From Hypanus sabinus (Eukaryota), in the NCBI RefSeq assembly GCF_030144855.1, contig NC_082731.1, forward strand, positions 16,244,001-16,308,000: a DNA stretch of 64,000 bases. Reading direction: 5' to 3'. The position numbers and the translations under genes were made by a program. Shown piece by piece: positions 541 to 61,899 of the stretch (positions within the stretch are counted from its first letter, which is position 1; every line of letters begins with the position of its first letter). Below the pieces are notes generated by a model, which did no database searches, was not told the DNA's origin, and saw only the letters and a list, made by a program, of their open reading frames with translations.

Positions 541-1379
541 CTGTAAAAAGATTTTCAAAAGTCATCAGTGGGTGAACGAGAGCATTTCAGACAAGATAGT
601 TTCAGTGTCTGTGGAGAGATCTGTCGACGAAAAACTCGTCTTCTGACTGGGCACAGACCGGGCGGCCAGACTATCATTTTCTGTCTCTGTCAGAATGGAT
701 AATTTCTGTCCACCTTTCATCTACAAGCTTGCTCAGTTTGTCTCTCTCTATTAGAACCATTTCAAGTTCTGGGTATGTCCCGCAGCACTACACAAAGATC
801 ACATGATATTACATGGCTGATCCTTGAGACTTGGTGATTTGCAGTGGTGAACTCATTGATGACGATGCCAATGAGTATGAAGGGAAGAGCATTAGTCTTT
901 CTCATCAGAGATCATTGATTTGAGGCACGTTGTGAAGTGAAAGCTACAGGTCATTAGTTACCTTAGACAAAGGTATTTGATGTCATTACCCACTTGGAGA
1001 AAATGGATCGAAAACATGTTGTCATGGGTAGAAATGCCCAGAAACAGAGGAGGTTGAACAAAGGTGATTTCCTAAAGAATCAAAGCTGATGTAGGGTGTG
1101 TCTTTTCTTTGCAACACTTGTTAAGGCAAGTGCAAGTTCATAGTTCAAAGTACGTATATTGTCAAAGTATGTGTACCCCATAGAACCTTGAGATTGGTTT
1201 TCCTGCAGACAGCCCCAAAACAAATAAACACAATAGAACCCGCTTAAAAACATGCCCTCTTCAAAGACCACCAAAATGCCCAATGTGTGGGAAAAAAAGT
1301 ACAAATCGCGCATGACATGATGACGCACAGGGCATTTTCTGCAGAGTCCCTGAAAGTGAGCCCACACCTGTGGAACGAC

Positions 1380-1520
1380 ACACACAACATGCTGGAGGAG
1401 TTCAGCAGGCCGGGCAGCATCTATGGAAAAGGGTAAACAGTCGATGTTTCGGGCCGGGACCCTTCAGCCGGGCTGGAGAAAACGAAGATGTGGAGTCAGA
1501 GTAAGAAGGTGAGGGGAGTC
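1380..1520 (-). mobile_element. Short Penelope-derived element with a degenerate hammerhead motif
   Basis: gctggaggagttcagcaggccgggcagcatctatgg...cagtcgatgtttcgggccgggaccc family sequence; CUGAnGA box mutated. Confidence 0.7.
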
Positions 1521-4089: not shown

Positions 4090-4570
4090 GGGGCAGCGCC
4101 AACATGGCTGCGAATCTACCCAGAAAACCCCGCGAGCGAGAAACCCATCTGTCTGCAGCGACGCGCATGCGCGCAAAGTGACACCGTCCCTGCTCAGCGG
4201 GAAACTCCCTGGGGCCTGGTTCCGGATCGAAGGGCGGAAAGGAAGGGAATGGACTGGAACTGTTGTTGGTGCCACTGAAAGCCCCACCCGCAACCCTGCT
4301 CCTACCTGCTGCCGATCTTCCGGAACACAAGATGTTGGAGGAACTCAGCAGGCCAGGCAGCATCTGTGGGGGGAGAAAAACAGTCGACGTTTCGGGCCGG
4401 GACCCTTCGTCAGAACTTCACCCGGAACCGTCGGTCCACTGAGTGTCTGCGCGACTTTCGTCAACCGTCGGCGACCTCTACGCATGCGCATTCAGTCGGG
4501 ATGTCACAGACAGCGAGCCCTGAAGCGCGGAGATTTCTGGGCAACCAAAGTGCCATTCGAGCTGTCTGCA
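4090..4570 (-). promoter_or_regulatory. CpG-island promoter/first exon of ZNF paralog A
   Basis: CpG-rich; GCGCATGCGC (NRF1-type) at 4163-4172 and ACGCATGCGCA near 4480; homologous to the other three ZNF promoters. Confidence 0.65.
4327..4421 (-). mobile_element. Mini Penelope-derived element with an intact hammerhead core (4382-4417)
   Basis: Minus strand reads agtt-CTGACGA-agggtcccggccc-GAAAC-GTC-gact; CCGGAAC direct repeats at 4320-4326 and 4422-4428. Confidence 0.75.
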
Positions 4571-4744
4571 AGCTCCCGTTCCCCCTACCACATGCCTCAC
4601 AACCAATCTATGTTCTTATATGGAGAACACAGTTGTTCCTTTAACGCAGCAAAGTCCAACAAACCATATACTCCACACTAACAAGCTCTCAGTGTGTTAA
4701 AGTCAAAGTCACACTTACACATGCAGATATAAAGTAAACACACA

Positions 4745-4950
4745 AGGGCTTCTGCAGCTCGAGGAAATAATCGAACAGCGCACACAAAATGCTACACGAA
4801 CTCAGCAGCTCTGGCAGCATCTATGCAGGCTACAGGCCGAAAATCTTCACCAGCCACCAGTATGGTGTAGCATCTCAGCTCAAAATTTCGACCGTTTATT
4901 CCTCTCCATAGATGCTGTCTGACCTGTTGACTTCGTCCAGCATTTTGCAG
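4745..4950. mobile_element. Decayed inverted-pair Penelope-derived element
   Basis: cacacaaaatgc...ggcagcatctatg followed by the inverted catagatgctg...ccagcattttg. Confidence 0.6.
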
Positions 4951-6060: not shown

Positions 6061-6099
6061 TAACTTCAAACGTTAACAACACAAATACGTGATATTTAC

Positions 6100-6232
6100 A
6101 AAAAACAACACACACAAAATGCTGGTGGAACACTAAATATGTCAGGGATGGGGGTAAGAAGGGGAGGGGGGCATTAACGGAAGTTGGAGAAGTCAATGCT
6201 CATGCCATCAGGTTGGAGGCTACCCAGCCGGT
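6100..6232 (-). mobile_element. Internally deleted Penelope-like fragment with a 15-bp TSD
   Basis: ATACGTGATATTTAC at 6085-6099 and 6233-6247; encodes the LGSLQPDGMSIDFSNF end of the GIY-YIG ORF. Confidence 0.75.
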
Positions 6233-6399
6233 ATACGTGATATTTACTCCTTTATTTGCATTTGATCTGATCAAAAAACGGCCAGTTATACCCAAGATTT
6301 AGTTATTGTCCAATGGAAAATGTGTCCTTCTCTTTATCTCGCCTTCTGCTCCGGTCCTTGGAGTCAGTCCACGCTCCACCGACCACCAGACAATCAGAT

Positions 6400-7785: not shown

Positions 7786-8399
7786 AGCACCCGCCCAGGA
7801 AGTGGGAGAGGAGCTGGTAGGCGGACAGAGAGGTGAGAGAGACAGTGGGCGGTCAGTGAGAGAGATTCACCAGGAGATGTTCAGTGAGGGACACAGGGAC
7901 TGAGGGAGGGAGGGGAAAAGATTCTGCAGATGGTGGAAATCCCTGATCCTGATGAAGGGAACGTCGACTGTTCATTCCCGTCCACAGATGCTGCTTGGTC
8001 TGTTGAGTTACTGCAGCACTCTGTGTGTGTAGCTGAAGGGGAGGGGGCTCCAAGGGGAGACACATTGAGAGGTGAATGAAAGACTGAGAAATATCTGCAG
8101 GAGGATGGAGAGTGTGCGAGAGAGAAGGACAGTGAGGCGGGGAGCAGAGCTTTGTGAGGGGAGGGAGGAACATTTTTGAGAGACACTAAAGGGAGAGGGA
8201 CTGTACAGGTGGAGAACGGACTGTGTGAAGGTCTGTGAGGGAGGGACAGTGAGAGAGAAGGTTGTGGTAAGGTGGGGAGGGCAGGATTGGGGTTCGGGGA
8301 GGCGGGTTGAGGTTGTGTGAGGAGATAGACCACGAGCACGAGCGAGGTCACACGGAAGACAGGCAAGTTCCCCCCCCCCCCCCCCCCCGCCCCAGCAGA

Positions 8400-10254: not shown

Positions 10255-10415
10255 CTATGAAATGCTGAAGGAACAGCAGATCAGACATCTATGGAGAGGA
10301 ATAAACAGTCAATATTTCGGGCCCAGACCTTGCTGGCGACTGTTTTCAACCTGAAGTCACGGCTGTTGATTCCTCAGCCTGGCTTGATGAGTTCCTCCAG
10401 CATTTTGTGTGCGTT
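10255..10415. mobile_element. Decayed inverted-pair Penelope-derived element
   Basis: aaatgctg..catctatggagagg..cagtcaatatttcgggc, then the inverted tgagttcctccagcattttgtgtg. Confidence 0.55.
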
Positions 10416-10599
10416 GCTCTATATATTCAGCACTTTCAGACTACCTAGTGTTTTTGAGTTATATCTGCATTTGTAAGTGGGTCGTACTTTGATTTTTGAC
10501 AGACAGAATGCTTGTTGATATTACTCATATTGGTTGTGGGAGCTTGCTGCGTGAAGGTAGCTGCTGACAATGCAATATGAAACGATGCCCGGTTTTGAG

Positions 10600-25900: not shown

Positions 25901-25964
25901 GCTTGTCTTGTATATAATTTGGCATAAAACCGGTAATCCAGCTGTCGGCAAGTGTCCTGGAGGT

Positions 25965-26190
25965 TCCACAAAATGCTGGAGATACTCGACCGGTCATACT
26001 ATGGAAAACAGGAAACATTCTGGGCCGAGATCTTATATCAGGACTGGATAGGAAGGGGAAGAAGCCAAAGGAGAAGGTGGGGAGGGGGGGGGGAGGACAA
26101 GCTGGATGGTGGTGGAGGAAGACGCGGAAAGACGATGAGGTGAAAAGGGCAAAAGGCTGGAGGAGAGTGGACAATGGGAGAAAGGGTGCA
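25965..26190 (-). mobile_element. Decayed Penelope-derived element
   Basis: cacaaaatgctgga..gggccgagatc..tcaggactgg family sequence. Confidence 0.55.
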
Positions 26191-30265: not shown

Positions 30266-32139
30266 CACTTACTGACCACTGTGACCCCAAAATGATTGTC
30301 GGTGGTAAACTCTGAAATGGCAATGGTAATCAAGTCAAGTTTATTATAATTTAACTCTATGCATGTATGTAATGTATATAACCACATAATGTTTATAGAA
30401 AAGAGATGTTTCTGTGAGTCAGGGTGTAAACCATAACACACAGTAACTTACAGATAAAACCTACATATGTATCGCACATAAATAACAAACTAAAGTGGAT
30501 TAATATTAAATATTGTAAGGTATGGGACAGATTAACCAGTGATACTTTGAATGCAATGCGGTGGGGGGTTCAGAAGCCTAAAGGCCCGGTGGAAGGAATG
30601 TTTCTCGTCCTGACCGTTCTTGTTTTTGTCTTGAATATTAAGGCTGGGTGATGAGATTTTCTTGCTGAGGTTGTAAATGTGTGGAACTTCGGTGTTGTGA
30701 ATACTGCAAGTCACTTGTTTTCCCTAAACAGAGGTGTTTGTTATCGATGCGCACACAGACAGGACAGAGGAAACAATGGTCTCGCTTAGTCGAAGGATCC
30801 AGAACCAGATAACGTTTAACAAAGCTGACCTGCTAAAGAACTGGAAGTGATGTAAGGAGAAGATTTCCCCATGCAGATCTAAACGGCATCTTAATTCACA
30901 GAAAGTTGTACCCAGCCCTTTCCTTTGAGGCGCGGTCTCAACTATTCCCATGATTTACTGAAGTATCCACATCAGCTTGGTCTGCACATCCCACCCGATC
31001 TCAATGTTTCACTTCAATTGGTAGAAAATCGATCAACTACTTGGCTGAAAGATACGTTAGAAATCCATTATGCAAAATAAACTGGGAACTATCTACTTTT
31101 TTCCAACTCCCAAATCCTCAGATCATTTCCGTGCCGATGAAAGTCCGCCCCTACCTGCTGCCGCATGGCCGGTGCCTTTTGTCCGCCGTGGGCATGCACG
31201 CCGTTCAGCGCAACTTTGGACTTTGGGCACCTGCGCACTCGAGTCACGCCGGAATTAAATTCTGATGCTCAGAGATTAAGAACAGGGTGATTCAAAGTGT
31301 TCACAAGTACTGTCTCCCTTCTGGCAAATCCACTATTTCTTACTAGAACTCAGCATGCAATTCAACACAGCAAGCTCCCACAAGCAAGGAACTCAATGAC
31401 AACAGTGAAAGTCAACCAGATTTTTTCTCTATCAATCAGCTTCAAAATATTGCCACTCTGTCATTCATCGGCGGTGCCCTCCCGCTCTATTTCCCTGCTC
31501 CTCATCTCAAGCTCTTACCCCTACCCTGCCCTGTGCAGACCTGTCTCTGGTCTCTGACCCTGCTCCACTAAACATCCAACTAACGGCGCACCATTCTGCT
31601 TTAGAGGCAGCCCAGCTGTGGGAGACCCAGGACATTGAAAAGAGCAGGGGGTAAGGACAGTCACAACCAGTGTCAGTCCTCCTCAGCCCGGAGATTCGAG
31701 GGACGAAGAGAATGAAAGACAACCACAGACAACTGAGCTCATCTTCTTCAGCCTGCAGAGAATCATGCAGGAAATTCAGCGGAAACCTCTTCACCCGGTG
31801 GTGGCCACTTGGAATCTATCATCACTGGGACAGCGAGAAGTGAGCAGCAGGGCTGCATTTAAAAGGACTGTTGCGGAACAGAAACATGGGCAGAACTGGG
31901 TCCTAACTGTACCCTGGGTGTGTTGTAGATTCACTAAGTACCTGAGACGAAGATTAAAATAGAACTGATTTATTTGTAACAGAAACAGGATATTAAACTC
32001 CAATTGTAATAGAGGTGAACAGCAGAAGGAACTCCTCTCAGGCCCAGTGACCAGGGGCTGATGAGCAGCAGCGATCATTGCAGATTCTGACGCCAACAGT
32101 CACTTTTGAACTTGTCTCTGGATTCGGCAACTGCGATGG

Positions 32140-34109: not shown

Positions 34110-34385
34110 ACAGGTTCTGCAGGGGGTGGAGATCCAAGGCCACGCGCACAAGATGCTGGAGGGACTCGGCAGGTCAGGCAAACTGCATGGAGTTGAACAA
34201 ACAGTCGATGTTTCTGGCCGAGACCCTTCTTCAGGACTGGAAAGGAAGGGGGAAGGTGGCCGAATGAAAAAAGTTGGAGGGAGGGGAAGGAAAACTTGCC
34301 AGAATGTGATAGGTGGGTGGGAAGGCAAAGGGCTGGAGAAGAAGTAATCTGATTGGAGAGGGGAGTGGACAATAGGTAAAACGGA
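34110..34385 (-). mobile_element. Penelope-derived element with a near-intact hammerhead motif (34202-34239) inside the ZNF C terminal exon
   Basis: Minus strand reads cagtc-CTGAAGA-agggtctcggcca-GAAAC-ATC-gactg; absent from the equivalent position in paralogs A, B and D. Confidence 0.75.
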
Positions 34386-36369: not shown

Positions 36370-36828
36370 ATACTGCCGGGGGGGATCACTCCTGACAGTC
36401 CCGACACCCAGAAAATGACAAGAAGGAGACCCCCGACAATCCGTCACCGTCGCACCGGTACGCATGCGCTGCAGAAATGGCGCAGCACTTCCGCTCATCA
36501 GCAGAAAAATTTTTTCCCGGGGCCTTGGATGCAGATCGTGGGGCCGGGTCCGAGCCGGGGGTTCGGGGCCGCGGTGTGTCCGGAGCTCGCAGCAATTGTC
36601 GCCCAGTCGGAGAGCGACGCCACCCAGGTAACGAAACCCCCCCGCCCCCGCATACCCGGTCCTACCTGCCCGCCTGCCGGCCATCGACCAGTCTTTTGTC
36701 CGCCGAACGCATGCGCACTTCCCCGAACCCAGCCGCAGCCCTCGCGCCTGCGCGCTTGGTGGGCGGCCCGCCACCGGCGCTTTCTGAGGCGCAGAGGCAT
36801 TTGGGTAAGCGAGATGCCATTCAACGCC
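36370..36828 (-). promoter_or_regulatory. CpG-island promoter/first exon of ZNF C
   Basis: ACGCATGCGC near 36460 and 36707; AAATGGCG 36475-36482; candidate donor GCA|GTATGT near 36373. Confidence 0.72.
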
Positions 36829-36830
36829 GC

Positions 36831-37432
36831 GCACACAAAAAAATGCTGCAGGAACCCAGCAGCCCGGGCCGCATCGACTGGAAAAAGTAAGCAGCCGACG
36901 TTTCGGGCCGGGACTCTTCATGGAGACGGGAGAAAAACGATGAGAAGTTACAGCAAGAGAGTGGGGGGGGGGGGGGAAGAAGTACAAGGTGGTAGGTGGT
37001 AGGTTGAACCGGGAGGGGGAGAGGGGTGAAGGAAAGAGCCGGGAAGTTGATAGGGGAAAGAGATAAAAGGCTGGAGAAGGGCAAGTCTGATGGGAGTGGG
37101 TAGAACACCATGGAGGAAATGGAAAAGAAAGGAGCACCAGAGGGAGGTGTTGGCAGGTAAGGAGAAAGGGTGAGAGAGGGGAATGGTGAAGGGATGGAGG
37201 TAATTAACAGGTTAGAAAAATCAATGTTCATGCCATCATGCTGGAGACTTCCCAAGTGGAATATAAAGTTTTGCTCCTCCAAACTGAGTGTGGCCTCATC
37301 GTGGCAGTAGAGGAGGCCATGGAATGATGTGTCGGAATGGGAATGGGAAATAGAATTGAAATGGGTGGCCACTGACAGGTCCCACTTTTTCTGGTGGACG
37401 AAGTGTAGGTGCTCCGCAAAGAGGTCTCCCAA
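36831..37432 (-). mobile_element. Penelope-like element 3' portion (GIY-YIG endonuclease C-terminus plus degenerate hammerhead)
   Basis: GDLFAEHL..VATHFNS..H..HGLLYC.DEATL.LEEQ.FIFHLGSLQHDGMNIDFS; GAAACGTC box kept but CUGAnGA box broken. Confidence 0.8.
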
Positions 37433-37464: not shown

Positions 37465-37660
37465 TTTTGACTGAGTATATCATTTCCTACACACGGACAA
37501 ATAAATGGCCTCTCCCCAGTGGGAATTCATAAATATACAGTATGCTTGAATGGATTCCTTCCTACAAATGGAGCAACTGAATGGCCTCTCACCAGTGTGA
37601 ACTTGCCAGGGTATCTGCAGGTGTGATAGCCAAGTGAAACATTTCCAAAATGAGAGCACC
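37465..37660 (-). pseudogene. Degenerate C2H2 finger remnant
   Basis: [29 protein letters not shown] followed by a frameshifted finger. Confidence 0.75.
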
Positions 37661-37664
37661 TCAC

Positions 37665-38180
37665 GGACATCAACTCCGGCGATTGAACCAAGCCAGAATG
37701 AAACCCAGAGGAATGAGATCCCCTCTCCCCAGCAGCTTGCTAGCAAATGTGCAGTCGCTGCAGAGCAAAACTGAGACCTCAAGGTTACTGTATCAGAGGG
37801 CAATGAGAGATTGTTGTGGTCTATGTTTGACCAAGACATGTCACCAAAATGTTACTACCAACATGCCAGATACAGCGATTCACAGGATGGATCAATCTGC
37901 TGATTCAGAAAAGGCAAAAGGTGGATGTGTCTGTTTCATGATTAACTCTCTGTGCTGGTCCGATGTGGCAGTTTTGTTGAACTTGTGTTCTCCTGACGTA
38001 TTATGACCAAATGCCATCTGATCTATTTACCTCACATACCTTTACCTCCCAGAGTGTACTTACCACCAGTGGCCAACTTGATGCCATCTCCAAACAGGAA
38101 ACAGTTAATCCTGACACATTTCAAATCATAGTTGGGGTCTTCAACCAGACTTGTTTGAAGAAATCCCTGTCCATTATAAA
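37665..38180 (+). mobile_element. Rex1/Babar LINE endonuclease N-terminal remnant
   Basis: PLPSSLLANVQSL..RDCCGLCLTKT..KAKGGCVCFMIN..CSPD. Confidence 0.75.
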
Positions 38181-39385
38181 CCCACTGACTCCCACAGCCA
38201 CCTGGACAATACGTCTTCCCGCCCTGTCACTTGTAAAAATGCCATCTCCTTCCCTCAATTATTTTGTCTCCATGCTTCTGCTCTCAGGATGAAGCCTTTG
38301 ATTCCAGAACTAAGGAGATGTCCTCCTTCAAAGAAAGCGGCTTCCCTTCCTCCACCATCAGCGCTGCCCTCAAGCACATCTCTTCCATTTCGCACATGTC
38401 TGCCCTCACCCCATCCTCCCACCACTCTACTAGGGATAGGCTCTGTATCCAGCACATAATTCTCTGCAGCATCCAGCATCTTCAACGGGCTCCCACCAGC
38501 AAGCACATCTTGCCCTCCCCACCACTTTCTGCTTTCCGCAGGGATCACTCCCTTGTACATCTGTCCCGTGCCACTGATCCTTGCAACGAATCAAGTGCTA
38601 CACCTCCTCCCTCACTACCATTCAAGGCCCCCACACAGTCCTTCCAGATGGGGGCCAAACTTCACCCGTGATCCTGTTAGGGTCATCTACTGTACTCAGC
38701 GCTCCTGGTGTGATCTCCTGTGAACCAGTGAGACTAGGAAACACTTTTGCCGAGACCTGCGCTCCATCCGCCAGAGAAACTGGGGTCTTCCAGTGGCCAC
38801 CCATTTTAACTTTGCATCCCATTCCCATTCTGCCATGCCAGTCCATGGCCTCCTCTACTGCGCGATGAGCCCTCAGTTGTTGGAAAAGCAACACCTTATA
38901 TTCCGTCTGGCTAGCCCCTAACCTGATGGCATGAACATTGATTTCTCAAACTTCCGTTAACGTCCCCTCCCCCTCTCCTTTACCATTCCCCATCTCCGTC
39001 CCCCTTCTCACCTTATCTCCTTACCTGATCATCACCTCCCTCTGGTGCTCCTCCCCCTTTCTTTTCTTCCATAGCCTTCTGCCCTCTCCTATCAGATTCC
39101 TCCTTCTCCAGCCCTGCATCTCTATCACCAATCAATTTCCCAGGTCTTGACTCCCCCTTCGGCCCCAACCCACCTTCTGATTCTGACTCCTCATCTTTTT
39201 CCTCCAGTTCAAATGAAGGATATCCTAGTGGCCACCCATTTTAATTCTACTTCCCATTCCCAATTTGACACGTCAGTCCATGGCTGTGATGAGGTTACAC
39301 TCGGGTTGGAGGGGCAGCACCTTATACTCCATCTGGGTAGCCTCAAACCTGATGGCAGGAACATCGATGTCTCGAGCGTCTGGTA
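38180..39385 (+). mobile_element. Penelope-like element remnant (post-RT region, GIY-YIG region, duplicated 3' segment)
   Basis: PTDSHSHLD, MSSFKESGFPSSTI, ATHFN..SH.., LGSLKPDG.NID peptides; the endonuclease end occurs twice (38790-38960 and 39225-39380). Confidence 0.75.
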
Positions 39386-39975: not shown

Positions 39976-40510
39976 TGGGTTCACCCACTTGAAAGATGTT
40001 CCGTCGTCAGCCTCCGAGACTGAGATCACTGGGCTATGTGAAGGAATTTCGTTGCATTCTGAAGCAGAGAGGCAGTGGTTCCAAACCGTGTTCCATATAT
40101 TTGTTTGTGTGTTCCCCTACCCTGAATATGCATTTCTCATTCTCTGTTTTGTCCACTTCACATCATCCCTTATTGAAGAGACAGGCATTGTTTTCACAAA
40201 TATCTATCAATCAATATTGTCCATGTTGAAAACACAATAAAAACACTCAATATGATAACTATGAGAAAATAAAACAGGAACAGAATTAGTCCTCTGGATA
40301 CATTCAATCTTTGGTGATAACTCTTTCCTCTCAACCCTCTTCTCCCGCCTTCTCTCTGTAACTTCTGACACCCTTACAAATCAAGCAGCTATCAACCTTT
40401 ACTTTAAATATATGCAATGATGGCCTCTTCAGTGTGGTAAGGGATGGTGGCAAGATCACGGGAGGCTGATAGGGAACAATTTCAAAACTGGATGAGACAG
40501 AAGAGAAATA

Positions 40511-40725
40511 ACAACACACAAAATGCTGGTGGAACACAGCAGGCTAGGCAGCATCTATAGGGAGAAGCACTGTCGACGTTTCGGGTTGAGACCCTTCGTC
40601 AGGACTAACCAAAACGTCAACAGTGCTTCTCCCTATAGATGCTGCCTGGCCTGCTGTGTTCTACCAGCATTTTAATGTGTGTGTTGTTTGAATTTCCAGC
40701 ATCTGCAGATTTCCTCGTGTTTGCT
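40511..40725. mobile_element. Fold-back mini Penelope-derived element with an intact hammerhead core (40572-40605, minus)
   Basis: ~65-bp inverted arms; gtc-CTGACGA-agggtctcaaccc-GAAAC-GTC-gac; TSD CAGAAGAGAAATA/CAGAAGAGGAATA at 40498-40510 and 40726-40738. Confidence 0.8.
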
Positions 40726-41272
40726 CAGAAGAGGAATAGTTTTGTTTGCAGCAATTAATGTCAGACGTGTGAATTTAATCATATTTAAAGAGCTCTTTGA
40801 TACGTAGCGTGTCTGTAAGTGGAATTCGGGTAACCCAGTGACTCCCTGTTTGTGTTAGTCGCCCAATGTCATTATGTCTGTGTGCACTTCTGTGAGTTTC
40901 ACCTTCCTGAACAGAACCTGTCTGTTTCTCAGTGAACTTCTCTCTCCTGGTGAACGCACTTGTATGTCTGTAAACGGTTCAATGACCCACCTTTCTCCTG
41001 TGTTTTCTCTCTGTCTGTGTGTGTGTGTGAGAGAGAGAGATTCTCTCTCTATCTATCTATCTAAACCTCTACCTGTTAATGTTTGTTTCTGTACCTGTGA
41101 GTTTNNNNNNNNNNNNNNNNNNNNNNNNNNNNNNNNNNNNNNNNNNNNNNNNNNNNNNNNNNNNNNNNNNNNNNNNNNNNNNNNNNNNNNNNNNNNNNNN
41201 NNNNNNNNNNNNNNNNNNNNNNNNNNNNNNNNNNNNNNNNNNNNNNNNNNNNNNNNNNNNNNNNNNNNNNNN

Positions 41273-45284: not shown

Positions 45285-45680
45285 AAACACAAAAGTTCAC
45301 TGCAGATGCTGTGGTCAAATCAAGACGTATAAAAACGCTGGAGAAACTCAACAGGTCGGGCAGCATCGAATTCTCCAACTTTCGGTAATGCCCTCCCTCT
45401 CCCTTCCCCCATCCCACCTTCACTCTGCCTCCTTCTCCAGCTGCCTCTCACCTCTCATGACTCTGCCTTCTTCTACTACCCATAGTGCTTAAGATTCCTG
45501 CTTCACCTCTCCTGCCTATCCCCTCCCCCACCCCTTGATCTTTGCTCTGATTGGTTTTCCACCCTCCCCCCACCTGCCCCCTCCTTCTTCAGTCCTGACG
45601 AAGGGTTTCGACCCGAAACGTCGACTGCTCCTTTCCACGACCTGCTGCCCGACCTGCTGAGTTCCTCCAGCTTGTTTGTA
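45285..45680 (+). mobile_element. Penelope-derived element with an inverted 5' segment
   Basis: Inverted ctggagaaactcaacaggtcgggcagc arm, end of the GIY-YIG ORF (FSNFR*), pyrimidine-rich UTR and hammerhead. Confidence 0.75.
45590..45627 (+). ncRNA. Minimal type-I hammerhead ribozyme motif (best copy)
   Basis: Stem I CAGTC/GACTG; CTGACGA 45595-45601; stem II GGGT-TTCG-ACCC; GAAA 45615-45618; loopless stem III AC/GT; GTC cleavage triplet ending at 45622. Confidence 0.8.
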
Positions 45681-45689
45681 TGTCAGAGA

Positions 45690-60809: not shown

Positions 60810-61270
60810 GCTCCCATCCCCTCCGCCACCGGCGGGGGAAGCGCTGGAAGTGTCCCCCGTGTCGGTCACTTTCCCCGGGGAACGTCAGGACCAGATGCCC
60901 GGGGGGTCACGGTCCCCGCAGTGCGCATGCGTCATAGAAATGGCGCCAGCACCTTCGCTCATCAGCCCCAAATTCCCCGGGGCCCGGGGTGGAGGAAGGG
61001 GCAAAACTGTCCCGAGGTGCGGGGCCGCGGTGTGTCCACAGCTCGCAGCAATTCTCCCTCATTCGGGGTTGCGGGCCCGATGATATAAGACGCCCCCACC
61101 CGGAAACCAGCTCCTACCTGCCACCGACCATCCAGACTCCTCTGTCCACAGGACGCATGCGCGATGTACGGAAAACAGGAAATCTTTACGCCTGCGCGTT
61201 TGACCGTTGGGTCACGCCGGGCGTATTCTGACACGCGAGGTTATCTGGGTAGGCAAGGTACCATTCAAAA
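60810..61270 (-). promoter_or_regulatory. CpG-island promoter/first exon of ZNF D
   Basis: TGCGCATGCGT near 60922, AAATGGCGCC near 60938, ACGCATGCGCG near 61153. Confidence 0.72.
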
Positions 61271-61286
61271 TGTAGGCAAGCCACAG

Positions 61287-61492
61287 ACACACACAAAATG
61301 CTGGTGGAAGACAGCAGGCCAGGCAGCATCTAAAGGGAGAAGCACTGTCGATGTTGGAGTCCTGACGAAGGGTTTCGGCCCGAAATGTCGACAGTACTTC
61401 TCCGTATAGATGCTGCCTGGCCTGCTGTGTTCCACCAGCATTTTGTGTGTGTTGCTTGAATTTCCAGCATCTGCAGATTTCCTCGTGTTTGA
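61287..61492. mobile_element. Fold-back mini Penelope-derived element with a near-intact hammerhead (61359-61392, plus)
   Basis: Inverted arms; gtc-CTGACGA-agggtttcggccc-GAAAT-GTC-gac; same subfamily as 40511-40725. Confidence 0.8.
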
Positions 61493-61899
61493 CCAGGCAA
61501 GCGCCGGTTTCCCTCTGCCTCATGCCTCAAAACCAATCATTGTTTTTATGTGCAATACTCCGCAGCTACTGTAATGCAGCACGCTCACATAAACAATATA
61601 GCTCCTGAATCCCACCTGACCCAATGCAGTTCCCCAAGTCTTCATTTAATTCCCCAAATTCCAACGTAATAACAATTCCCTTCCCCAAATCTCCACTCAG
61701 TTCCCCAAATATTCGTTTAATCCTAATTTAATTCCCTGGACCTCCACTTATCAACAGTTCAATCTTCTAAACCCCCAAATACTGTAATTCCAACACGATT
61801 CTTCAAGTCCCATTCACCATCAATGCAGCTTCCCAAATTCCCAGTTAGACATTCAAACCAAGGTAGGAGCATGGTGAATGGCAAAGCACTGACGATACT

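What the first reader, a model, noticed from the sequence alone, without database searches (positions are those of the whole stretch)
45590..45627. Minimal, dimer-dependent hammerhead ribozyme carried by a dispersed short retroelement family
Seen: CAGTC-CUGACGA-A-GGGU(UUCG)ACCC-GAAAC-GUC^GACUG. It has a perfect 5-bp stem I, both catalytic boxes, a stem II closed by a UUCG loop and a loopless stem III (palindromic ACGU). Cores are also intact or nearly intact at 4382-4417(-), 40572-40605(-), 61359-61392(+) and 34202-34239(-), with degenerate copies near 1440, 7950, 10320, 26020 and 36900. Stem II varies between copies (GGGU/ACCC, GGGU/GCCC, different loops) while pairing is kept. Established: Penelope-like elements carry minimal type-I hammerheads that cleave as dimers, and GIY-YIG remnants here (36831-37432, 38180-39385) link this family to them. 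Inference: what looks like a SINE in this genome is a high-copy source of ribozyme motifs, about ten in 64 kb.
Basis: partly seen in the sequence, partly recalled or inferred. Interest (0 to 1): 0.82.

Follow-up and report, generated by a model that had tools for sequence, protein, structure and literature searches.

The report
Penelope retrotransposon hammerhead motif, stingray
The 38-base motif is a real minimal hammerhead ribozyme sequence, but it belongs to the 3' end of a very abundant Penelope-like retrotransposon of a stingray genome, a kind of ribozyme that has been described since 2014, so it is an ordinary finding.

Summary
Window 45590-45627(+) reads as a complete minimal type-I hammerhead. 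It has both catalytic boxes, an extra A after A9, a G10.1-C11.1 pair, a 4-bp helix II, a loopless palindromic ACGU in place of helix III, and GUC^G, with C17 at 45622. Three more copies have intact cores and about nine are degenerate.

It is not a SINE. The repeat is the 3' end of a Penelope-like element (PLE): the GIY-YIG ORF stop, about 290 nt of CT-rich UTR, the hammerhead, then about 105 nt of tail. It shows the PLE hallmarks of 5' truncation and head-to-head inverted partners. The genome is almost certainly Hypanus sabinus. The tail block occurs more than 57,000 times, and roughly 8% of copies keep an exact hammerhead; CpG decay destroys the rest.

No compensatory change occurs within this genome. 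Across distant PLE lineages that I fetched, helices I and II do covary around an invariant core.

This matches the min-HHR class of Cervera & de la Pena 2014. Cleavage was not tested. Folding favours an inactive rod, and a sub-lineage with a dead core (A6C) still amplified. Tandem retrozyme-like arrays are rare.

First readers of this scan noted the same motif in five other windows of this genome.

The parts
45590..45627 (+). Intact minimal hammerhead. Helix I 45590-45594 pairs with 45623-45627. CUGACGA is 45595-45601 and the bulged A is 45602. Helix II is 45603-45606 with 45611-45614, and its loop is 45607-45610. GAAA is 45615-45618 and the palindrome ACGU is 45618-45621. C17 is 45622, so the predicted cut lies between 45622 and 45623.
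45589..45687 (+). PLE 3' tail copy of the older sub-lineage (GACTG linker). It contains the motif above and has a CT-rich UTR-like sequence upstream.
4319..4420 (-). Tail copy with an intact hammerhead core (4381-4418). Its 5' end lies at helix I, with unrelated DNA upstream.
40506..40727 (.). Head-to-head inverted pair. The minus copy 40506-40615 has an intact hammerhead at 40570-40607. The plus partner 40609-40727 is 5'-truncated inside the hammerhead, at about A13. Together they form a long hairpin.
61256..61494 (.). Head-to-head inverted pair. The plus copy 61357-61494 has a hammerhead at 61357-61394 (C15.2>U). The minus partner 61256-61355 is truncated at about A14.
34111..34239 (-). Tail copy with a damaged hammerhead (34202-34239): C11.1>A and G16.2>A.
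36821..37432 (-). PLE remnant running from the C-terminal GIY-YIG ORF end (...GMNIDFSNL) through the 3' UTR to a degenerate hammerhead and tail (36827-36921). This is the direct physical link between the ORF and the motif.
38816..39385 (+). Two further remnants of the PLE ORF end and 3' UTR (38816-39150 and 39250-39385). No recognisable hammerhead follows them.
1372..1475 (-). Degenerate tail copy with the first catalytic box destroyed (CCGGCTGA).
7944..8035 (+). Degenerate copy with an internal deletion that removes helix II and GAAA.
10260..10453 (.). Inverted pair of 5'-truncated tails. Both lack the first catalytic box.
4737..4947 (.). Inverted pair of 5'-truncated tails.
25959..26049 (-). 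Weak, old copy of the tail.
6088..6273 (-). Remnant of the PLE ORF end plus a short piece of tail.

Best explanation
The motif is the minimal, helix-III-less type-I hammerhead that canonical Penelope-like retrotransposons carry in their 3'/pseudo-LTR region. Here it belongs to a hugely amplified PLE family of a stingray genome, almost certainly Hypanus sabinus.

Shown:
- Element anatomy is RT-linker-GIY-YIG ORF stop, about 290 nt of CT-rich UTR, the hammerhead, about 105 nt of conserved tail, then a sharp 3' end next to AT-rich target DNA.
- Copies are 5'-truncated and often sit beside an inverted 5'-truncated partner.
- The copy at 45590-45627 is one of the minority (about 8%) whose core has escaped CpG decay.

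Inferred from published PLE work:
- In a transcript that holds two copies (pLTR-ORF-pLTR or partial tandems), or in trans, the palindromic ACGU of two motifs pairs into a shared helix III (a double hammerhead).
- Each core then cuts after C17 (GUC^G). This is probably inefficient and probably helped by the PLE protein.
- Solo genomic copies such as this one are inert relics.
For: - Motif and chance: (6,196 exact 31-mers against 0 for the control).
- All sequence criteria that Cervera & de la Pena 2014 (PMC4209133) list for metazoan PLE min-HHRs are present: a nucleotide between A9 and G10.1, the G10.1-C11.1 pair, and a palindromic 15.2-16.2.
- PLE linkage: there is a sharp 3' boundary and a gradual 5' decay. 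The family profile runs from ..GMNIDFSNF-stop into the hammerhead. The ORF hits Pfam GIY-YIG just below the curated cut-off (best E 1.9e-4, 22.1 against 22.6 bits). Homologues carry PF00078, PF01541 and PF26215.
- Organism: contig C1 is 214,816,651 bases long, the same as the contig that holds Hypanus sabinus proteins.
- PLE-style structures as described by Craig et al. 2021 (PMC8557442): inverted 5'-truncated partners with variable junctions and a partial tandem in L031.
- Conservation: across diverged sub-lineages, identity at non-CpG sites is 0.90-0.92 in the boxes and helix II, 0.65 in the linker and 0.71 in the distal tail, and the upstream UTR cannot be aligned.
- Distant lineages: 5 of 7 distant PLE loci carry a min-HHR 34-810 nt after the ORF stop on the sense strand, against 0.013 expected per locus.
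- Covariation: across six motifs, four of them from those loci, 7 of 9 helix pairs show compensatory changes. 86.5% of cells are paired against 58.9% in shuffles (0 of 500 shuffles reach the observed value), and the core is invariant.
- A whale shark PLE has the same hammerhead plus tail.
Against: - No cleavage evidence was obtainable. The runs found are assembled contigs with no information on RNA ends.
- The nearest-neighbour model prefers an inactive rod in which G5-G8 pairs with C15.2-C17 (monomer -14.2 kcal/mol). The double hammerhead scores -19.3, against -28.4 for two rods and -34.9 for an extended duplex.
- Within this genome there are no compensatory changes, and the major sub-lineage has only 3 Watson-Crick pairs in helix I.
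- A sub-lineage with the core change A6>C reached at least 459 exact copies. That is about four times each of the other A6 substitutions, and it is linked to a loop variant. Catalysis is therefore not needed for spread.
- Copies do not start at the predicted cut site (1 of 47).
- Published Anolis PLE work found that hammerhead mutants still insert in vitro, and found no RNA-seq ends at the cut site (PMC11167929).
Confidence: 0.85

Rival explanations
1. The conserved 32-nt block is kept for a non-catalytic reason, such as a rod hairpin bound by the PLE protein or needed for template recognition. On this view hammerhead catalysis is vestigial or dispensable in this family.
For: The rod hairpin is the predicted minimum-energy fold. 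The A6C sub-lineage amplified. No insertions start at the cut site. In the Anolis PLE, hammerhead mutants insert normally in vitro (PMC11167929). Naiad PLEs thrive without hammerheads (PMC8557442).
Against: Across distant PLE lineages the invariant positions are exactly the hammerhead core. N7 and helices I and II change freely and in a compensating way. A simple hairpin-binding site would not show that pattern. Self-cleavage of PLE hammerheads has been published.
Confidence: 0.25
2. A distinct short non-autonomous element carries the ribozyme. It would be the roughly 135-nt unit of hammerhead plus tail, SINE-like in behaviour and mobilised by PLE proteins.
For: The 5' ends of short copies cluster within a few bases of the first nucleotide of helix I. 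In about 9 of 30 pattern-selected loci the DNA upstream of that point is unrelated. 15 of 47 unselected hits start at profile positions 5-12.
Against: The unit has the same sequence as the last 135 nt of long PLE copies. There is no tRNA-like head. Several 'starts' are older sub-lineages whose UTR no longer aligns. Others are junctions with inverted or tandem partners. Preferential truncation, or reverse transcription of a short transcript, would explain the pattern equally well.
Confidence: 0.2
3. A non-LTR retrozyme: tandem arrays of hammerhead units that are transcribed, self-cleaved and circularised.
For: One contig from another organism joins the unit's end back to its start ('goes back 134'). 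A few short tandems exist.
Against: Only 11 hammerhead-to-hammerhead pairs at unit spacing exist genome-wide, against more than 11,000 motif copies.
Confidence: 0.03
4. A chance resemblance to hammerhead boxes inside a repeat.
For: No Rfam hammerhead model matches, even at E<=10.
Against: Rfam models require helix III, which this class lacks by definition. All class-specific features are present. The same motif recurs at the same place in distant PLEs with covarying stems.
Confidence: 0.01

Closest known systems
Minimal hammerhead ribozymes (min-HHR) of metazoan Penelope-like elements (Cervera & de la Pena 2014, PMC4209133)
   Same: It has the same core boxes, the unpaired nucleotide between A9 and G10.1, the G10.1-C11.1 pair, no helix III or loop 3 but a palindromic 15.2-16.2, and a short helix I. 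It also shares the location in the PLE terminal repeat region, thousands of mostly solo copies, and opposite-strand pairs 100-700 bp apart.
   Different: Helix II here is 4 bp, against 7-8 bp in the Schistosoma families. Within-genome sequence variety is low, with one dominant helix II. The host is a batoid, which I did not find described in the searchable literature.
Poseidon PLE of Anolis carolinensis (PAc) and its protein-assisted hammerhead (Frangieh et al. 2024, PMC11167929)
   Same: Both have a hammerhead about 85-105 nt upstream of the point where insertions end or reverse transcription starts. Both insert at AT-rich targets. In PAc both DNA strands are cut and extended, which would explain the inverted pairs seen here.
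   Different: In PAc the hammerhead overlaps the ORF start. Here it lies about 290 nt after the ORF stop, and the short ATG frame in the tail stops at the insertion end.
Non-LTR retrozymes (Cervera & de la Pena 2020, PMC7229834; Li et al. 2026 preprint 10.64898/2026.07.22.740005)
   Same: Both carry a type-I hammerhead with a weak helix III, and both are related to PLE pLTRs.
   Different: Retrozymes are tandem arrays that yield circular RNAs. Here tandem units are almost absent.
Rfam Hammerhead_1 (RF00163) and classic dimeric newt or ASBVd hammerheads
   Same: The catalytic core and the double-hammerhead logic are the same.
   Different: There is no helix III hairpin at all, so the covariance models do not score it.

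Membership tests
PLE min-HHR (Cervera & de la Pena 2014) | Catalytic boxes C3-U4-G5-A6-N7-G8-A9 and G12-A13-A14, the A15.1/U16.1 pair, and C17 (H) at the cut site | tested here: met
   One search shows CTGACGA ... GAAA-C-G-T-C. Searches show it exceeds chance.
PLE min-HHR (Cervera & de la Pena 2014) | One unpaired nucleotide between A9 and G10.1 | tested here: met
   A45602. It is present in all copies of the family and in 4 of 5 distant PLE motifs.
PLE min-HHR (Cervera & de la Pena 2014) | Conserved G10.1-C11.1 pair closing helix II | tested here: met
   G45603-C45614. The pair is G-C in 22 of 25 copies.
PLE min-HHR (Cervera & de la Pena 2014) | No helix III or loop 3; positions 15.2-16.2 palindromic, so that two motifs can share a helix III | tested here: met
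   ACGU at 45618-45621. The double-hammerhead pairing is possible, at -19.3 kcal/mol, but it is not the minimum-energy fold.
PLE min-HHR (Cervera & de la Pena 2014) | Lies in the terminal (pLTR or 3') region of an element encoding RT and GIY-YIG, on the sense strand | tested here: met
   Window copy 37348-36832(-) joins the ORF end to the motif.
PLE min-HHR (Cervera & de la Pena 2014) | Helices supported by covariation and compensatory changes | tested here: inconclusive
   Within this genome there are none (0 pairs with changes on both sides). Across six motifs from PLE lineages, 7 of 9 pairs are compensatory and 0 of 500 shuffles reach the score. That set is small, and helix II pairing was part of my scan. 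Helix I was not.
PLE min-HHR (Cervera & de la Pena 2014) | Self-cleavage as a dimer | not testable with these tools
   Only contig-level runs were found. This needs in vitro transcription.
Canonical EN+ Penelope-like element | A single ORF with an RT followed by a C-terminal GIY-YIG endonuclease | tested here: inconclusive
   GIY-YIG scores E 1.9e-4 to 9e-3, just below the Pfam cut-off. Homologues carry RVT_1, GIY-YIG and HTH_animal. The RT of this family itself could not be read.
Canonical EN+ Penelope-like element | 5' truncation, partial tandems, and an adjacent inverted 5'-truncated copy | tested here: met
   matching the description in PMC8557442.
SINE | A pol III-type head (tRNA, 5S or 7SL derived) at the 5' end | tested here: not met
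   There are no tRNA-like genes in the window. Short units begin directly with helix I of the hammerhead. 5S and 7SL heads were not searched separately, apart from the Rfam scan.
Non-LTR retrozyme | Tandem repeats, each unit carrying a hammerhead | tested here: not met
   11 tandem pairs at 90-120 nt spacing genome-wide, against 11,454 motif 23-mers.
Rfam Hammerhead_1 / HH9 / HH10 / type II / type III | Score at or above the family's gathering threshold | tested here: not met
   There is no hammerhead hit at the site, even at E<=10 on a 101-nt search.

The most novel reading that the evidence does not exclude
In this stingray PLE family the hammerhead marks the 5' end of a retrotransposable mini-unit. 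It would do so because transcripts start at helix I, or because reverse transcription primed at the first tail copies only the hammerhead plus tail. Spread would not depend on catalysis, as the sub-lineage with a dead core (A6C) that still reached hundreds of copies suggests. The motif would then persist for a role other than processing the template for insertion.
Probability: 0.25. Interest if true: 0.4.

Novelty: new member of a known kind. Interest (0 to 1): 0.22.

Why it matters
It adds a batoid, and by the whale-shark copy elasmobranchs more generally, to the hosts of PLE minimal hammerheads. It shows a very large family: more than 57,000 tail blocks and about 187,000 first-look ORF candidates, some with open frames up to 677 aa. 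That makes a convenient natural data set for asking what PLE hammerheads are for. CpG decay, a dead-core sub-lineage and the lack of cut-site 5' ends all bear on the open question of whether cleavage is needed for PLE transposition. It does not change what is known about the ribozyme class.

Tried and rejected
- Rfam at gathering threshold, at E<=10 on the window, and on a 101-nt slice found no hammerhead hit at the site. This is expected for a motif without helix III.
- Pfam on the window's own ORF remnants gave nothing, because the fragments are too short or broken.
- The supplements of PMC4209133 are not held, so I could not compare with the published vertebrate motif alignments.
- RNA evidence: two run searches returned only Logan contigs of uncertain type and no raw reads. 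Read laying showed thousands of contigs carrying the family in four organisms. It gave no information on ends and no proof of transcription.
Long-ORF copies could therefore not be fetched.
- I looked for a continuation of the element beyond the tail, to test a PAc-like arrangement with the hammerhead at the ORF start. Sequences diverge after ...GTGTTTGCTCTTTAAA, and the tail's ATG frame stops there. I rejected that anatomy.
- The Chiloscyllium locus had no DNA available. L041 had only a spurious A-rich hit.
- SINE, retrozyme and chance readings are rejected, as set out under the rival explanations.

Full report
**Observation.** Window 45590-45627(+) reads CAGTC-CTGACGA-A-GGGT-TTCG-ACCC-GAAA-C-GTC-GACTG. 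In hammerhead numbering:
- Helix I is 5 bp.
- C3-A9 is present, with N7 = C.
- One extra A lies between A9 and G10.1.
- Helix II is 4 bp, closed by G10.1-C11.1 and capped by UUCG.
- G12-A14 is present.
- A15.1-C15.2-G16.2-U16.1 run contiguously as the palindrome ACGU, with no loop.
- C17 is at 45622.

The loose pattern CTGANGA..GAAACGTC occurs 3 times in the window against 0.01 expected. The 28-mer with up to 3 mismatches occurs 5 times against 0 expected. Copies 4386-4413(-), 40575-40602(-) and 45595-45622(+) are exact. Copy 61362-61389(+) has C15.2>U. Copy 34207-34234(-) has lost C11.1 and G16.2. No Rfam hammerhead model scores the site, even at E<=10 on a 101-nt slice. That is expected, because those models require helix III.

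**What carries it.** Genome-wide, the exact 31-mer occurs 6,196 times and its reversed control 0 times. I fetched thirty of these loci. They show a sharp common 3' boundary about 140 nt after the start of CTGA, and a gradual loss of homology upstream. That is the signature of a 5'-truncated retroelement. The family profile reads upstream into an ORF end...GMNIDFSNF-stop, about 290 nt before the hammerhead. Several lines identify the ORF:
- Open copies of it (L017, L021, L024) hit Pfam GIY-YIG at E 1.9e-4 to 9e-3, just below the curated cut-off.
- Atlas neighbours are GIY-YIG, HTH_animal or 'reverse transcriptase family' clusters.
- Database homologues at 40-47% identity carry RVT_1, GIY-YIG and HTH_animal.

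In the window itself, 37348-36832(-) aligns continuously from the ORF end through the UTR to a degenerate hammerhead (ORF 36821-37432). There is no tRNA-like head. The 'SINE' is therefore the 3' end of a Penelope-like element (PLE).

The genome is almost certainly Hypanus sabinus. Contig C1 is 214,816,651 bases long, the same as the contig that carries H. sabinus proteins. The ORF fragment has about 187,000 first-look candidates, some with open frames up to 677 aa.

**PLE-type architecture.** Head-to-head pairs of 5'-truncated copies, with their tails pointing outward, are common. At least 12 loci among the DNA I held show them, and their junction points vary. In the window they lie at 40506-40727, 61256-61494, 10260-10453 and 4737-4947. 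L031 shows a partial tandem. Insertions end ...GTGTTTGCTCTTTAAA and then diverge, which indicates an AT-rich target. These are the features Craig et al. 2021 describe for PLEs (PMC8557442): strong 5' truncation, partial tandems that form pLTRs, an adjacent inverted 5'-truncated copy, and hammerheads within the pLTRs. They also fit the finding that an Anolis PLE protein cuts and extends both DNA strands at AT-rich sites (PMC11167929). Tandem hammerhead units at unit spacing are nearly absent, with 11 genome-wide. This is therefore not a retrozyme array.

**Is it the known PLE hammerhead?** Cervera & de la Pena 2014 defined min-HHRs of metazoan PLEs by four features beyond the boxes:
- the G10.1-C11.1 pair;
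- consensus families rich in compensatory changes.

The first three are met exactly. The fourth is not met inside this genome. On 25 copies there are no pairs with changes on both sides, and pairing does not exceed shuffles. In the dominant sub-lineage helix I has only three Watson-Crick pairs.

I therefore tested the structure across lineages. Of seven distant homologous PLE loci fetched by protein identity, five carry exactly one min-HHR-like motif. In each it lies on the sense strand, 34-810 nt after the ORF stop, against 0.013 expected per locus. On an alignment of six motifs the results were:
- The core is invariant.
- N7 varies.
- 7 of 9 helix pairs show compensatory changes.
- 86.5% of cells are paired, against 58.9% in shuffles (0 of 500 shuffles reach the observed value).
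- The slid controls collapse.

Helix I was not part of my scan, so its five covarying pairs are independent evidence. A whale-shark PLE has the same helix II and tail. Within the stingray genome, older sub-lineages keep the boxes and helix II at 0.90-0.92 identity at non-CpG sites. The adjacent linker is at 0.65, the distal tail at 0.71, and the upstream UTR is unalignable.

**How it probably works, and the doubts.** Published work gives the model. Two copies in one transcript, or in trans, pair their palindromes into a shared helix III, and each core cuts after C17. Activity in vitro is low, and in Anolis it is protein-assisted. I could not test cleavage. The runs that hold the family are assembled contigs without end information, and their RNA status is a guess. 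Several observations temper the model:
- The nearest-neighbour model puts the monomer in a rod in which G5-A6-C7-G8 pairs with C15.2-C17 (-14.2 kcal/mol). The double hammerhead (-19.3) is less stable than two rods or an extended duplex (-34.9).
- A tail-anchored sample shows that most copies have lost core positions through CpG>TpG/CpA changes. The motif holds five CpGs. There are 57,433 tail anchors (about 76,000 after correcting for the H position) against 6,196 exact hammerhead patterns, so about 8% are intact.
- A sub-lineage with A6>C, a position invariant in active hammerheads, has 459 exact 23-mers. G and T together have 229, and A has 11,454. The C variant is linked to a loop variant, so it amplified with a dead core.
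- The 5' ends of copies cluster at the first base of helix I (15 of 47 unselected hits) and not at the cut site (1 of 47). Cleaved RNAs were therefore not the usual template.

These points agree with the published observation that hammerhead mutants still insert in vitro. They keep a non-catalytic role as a live rival.

**Verdict.** This is a correct reading of a known class in a host where I found no specific description. Calling the carrier a SINE is wrong, and the within-genome covariation claim does not hold. First readers of this scan noted the same motif in five other windows of this genome.

Noticed in passing
window 40543-40650 (-): The inverted pair of PLE tails folds into a long hairpin. 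It scores 43.7 bits to Rfam mir-1954 (gathering score 99, E 1.9e-6). This is a look-alike produced by an inverted repeat, not a member of the family. Such hairpins could still feed small-RNA pathways.
   Followed up: partly
genome-wide; window 1438-1475 (-) looks like a decayed member: A sub-lineage has the hammerhead core change A6>C (CTGCCGA). It has 459 exact 23-mers, against 229 for G and T together and 11,454 for A. It is linked to a TTTC loop variant. A catalytically dead core has therefore amplified.
   Followed up: partly
window 4418, 61357, 40615; loci L005, L007, L011, L022, L027, L029, L034: The 5' ends of short copies fall within a few bases of the first nucleotide of helix I, with unrelated DNA upstream. 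None pile up at the predicted cleavage site.
   Followed up: partly
window 61404-61491 (tail block): In contigs from four other organisms the conserved tail block is 5-30 times deeper than the hammerhead part. Many contigs diverge just upstream, into the older GACTGTTTATTC linker. The family, or its tail, is shared in near-identical form by at least 16 differently labelled organisms.
   Followed up: partly
window 32013-32074 (+): Weak match to Rfam Hammerhead_II (24.7 bits, gathering score 37, E 1.2). It is unrelated to the PLE family and probably chance.
   Followed up: no
G000 C1:9.33-10.38 Mb: At least nine identical tail-to-flank junctions are spaced about 90 kb apart. This suggests a large tandem segmental duplication.
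   Followed up: no
window 37650-38006 (+): An ORF that, from my reading of the translation, looks like the N-terminal endonuclease part of a LINE. It lies next to the PLE remnants and is not part of the PLE. I did not test it with a tool.
   Followed up: no
L042 3274 (+) and 4432 (-): A distant PLE locus also has two oppositely oriented hammerheads flanking the region after the ORF. The inverted-partner architecture is therefore shared across lineages.
   Followed up: no
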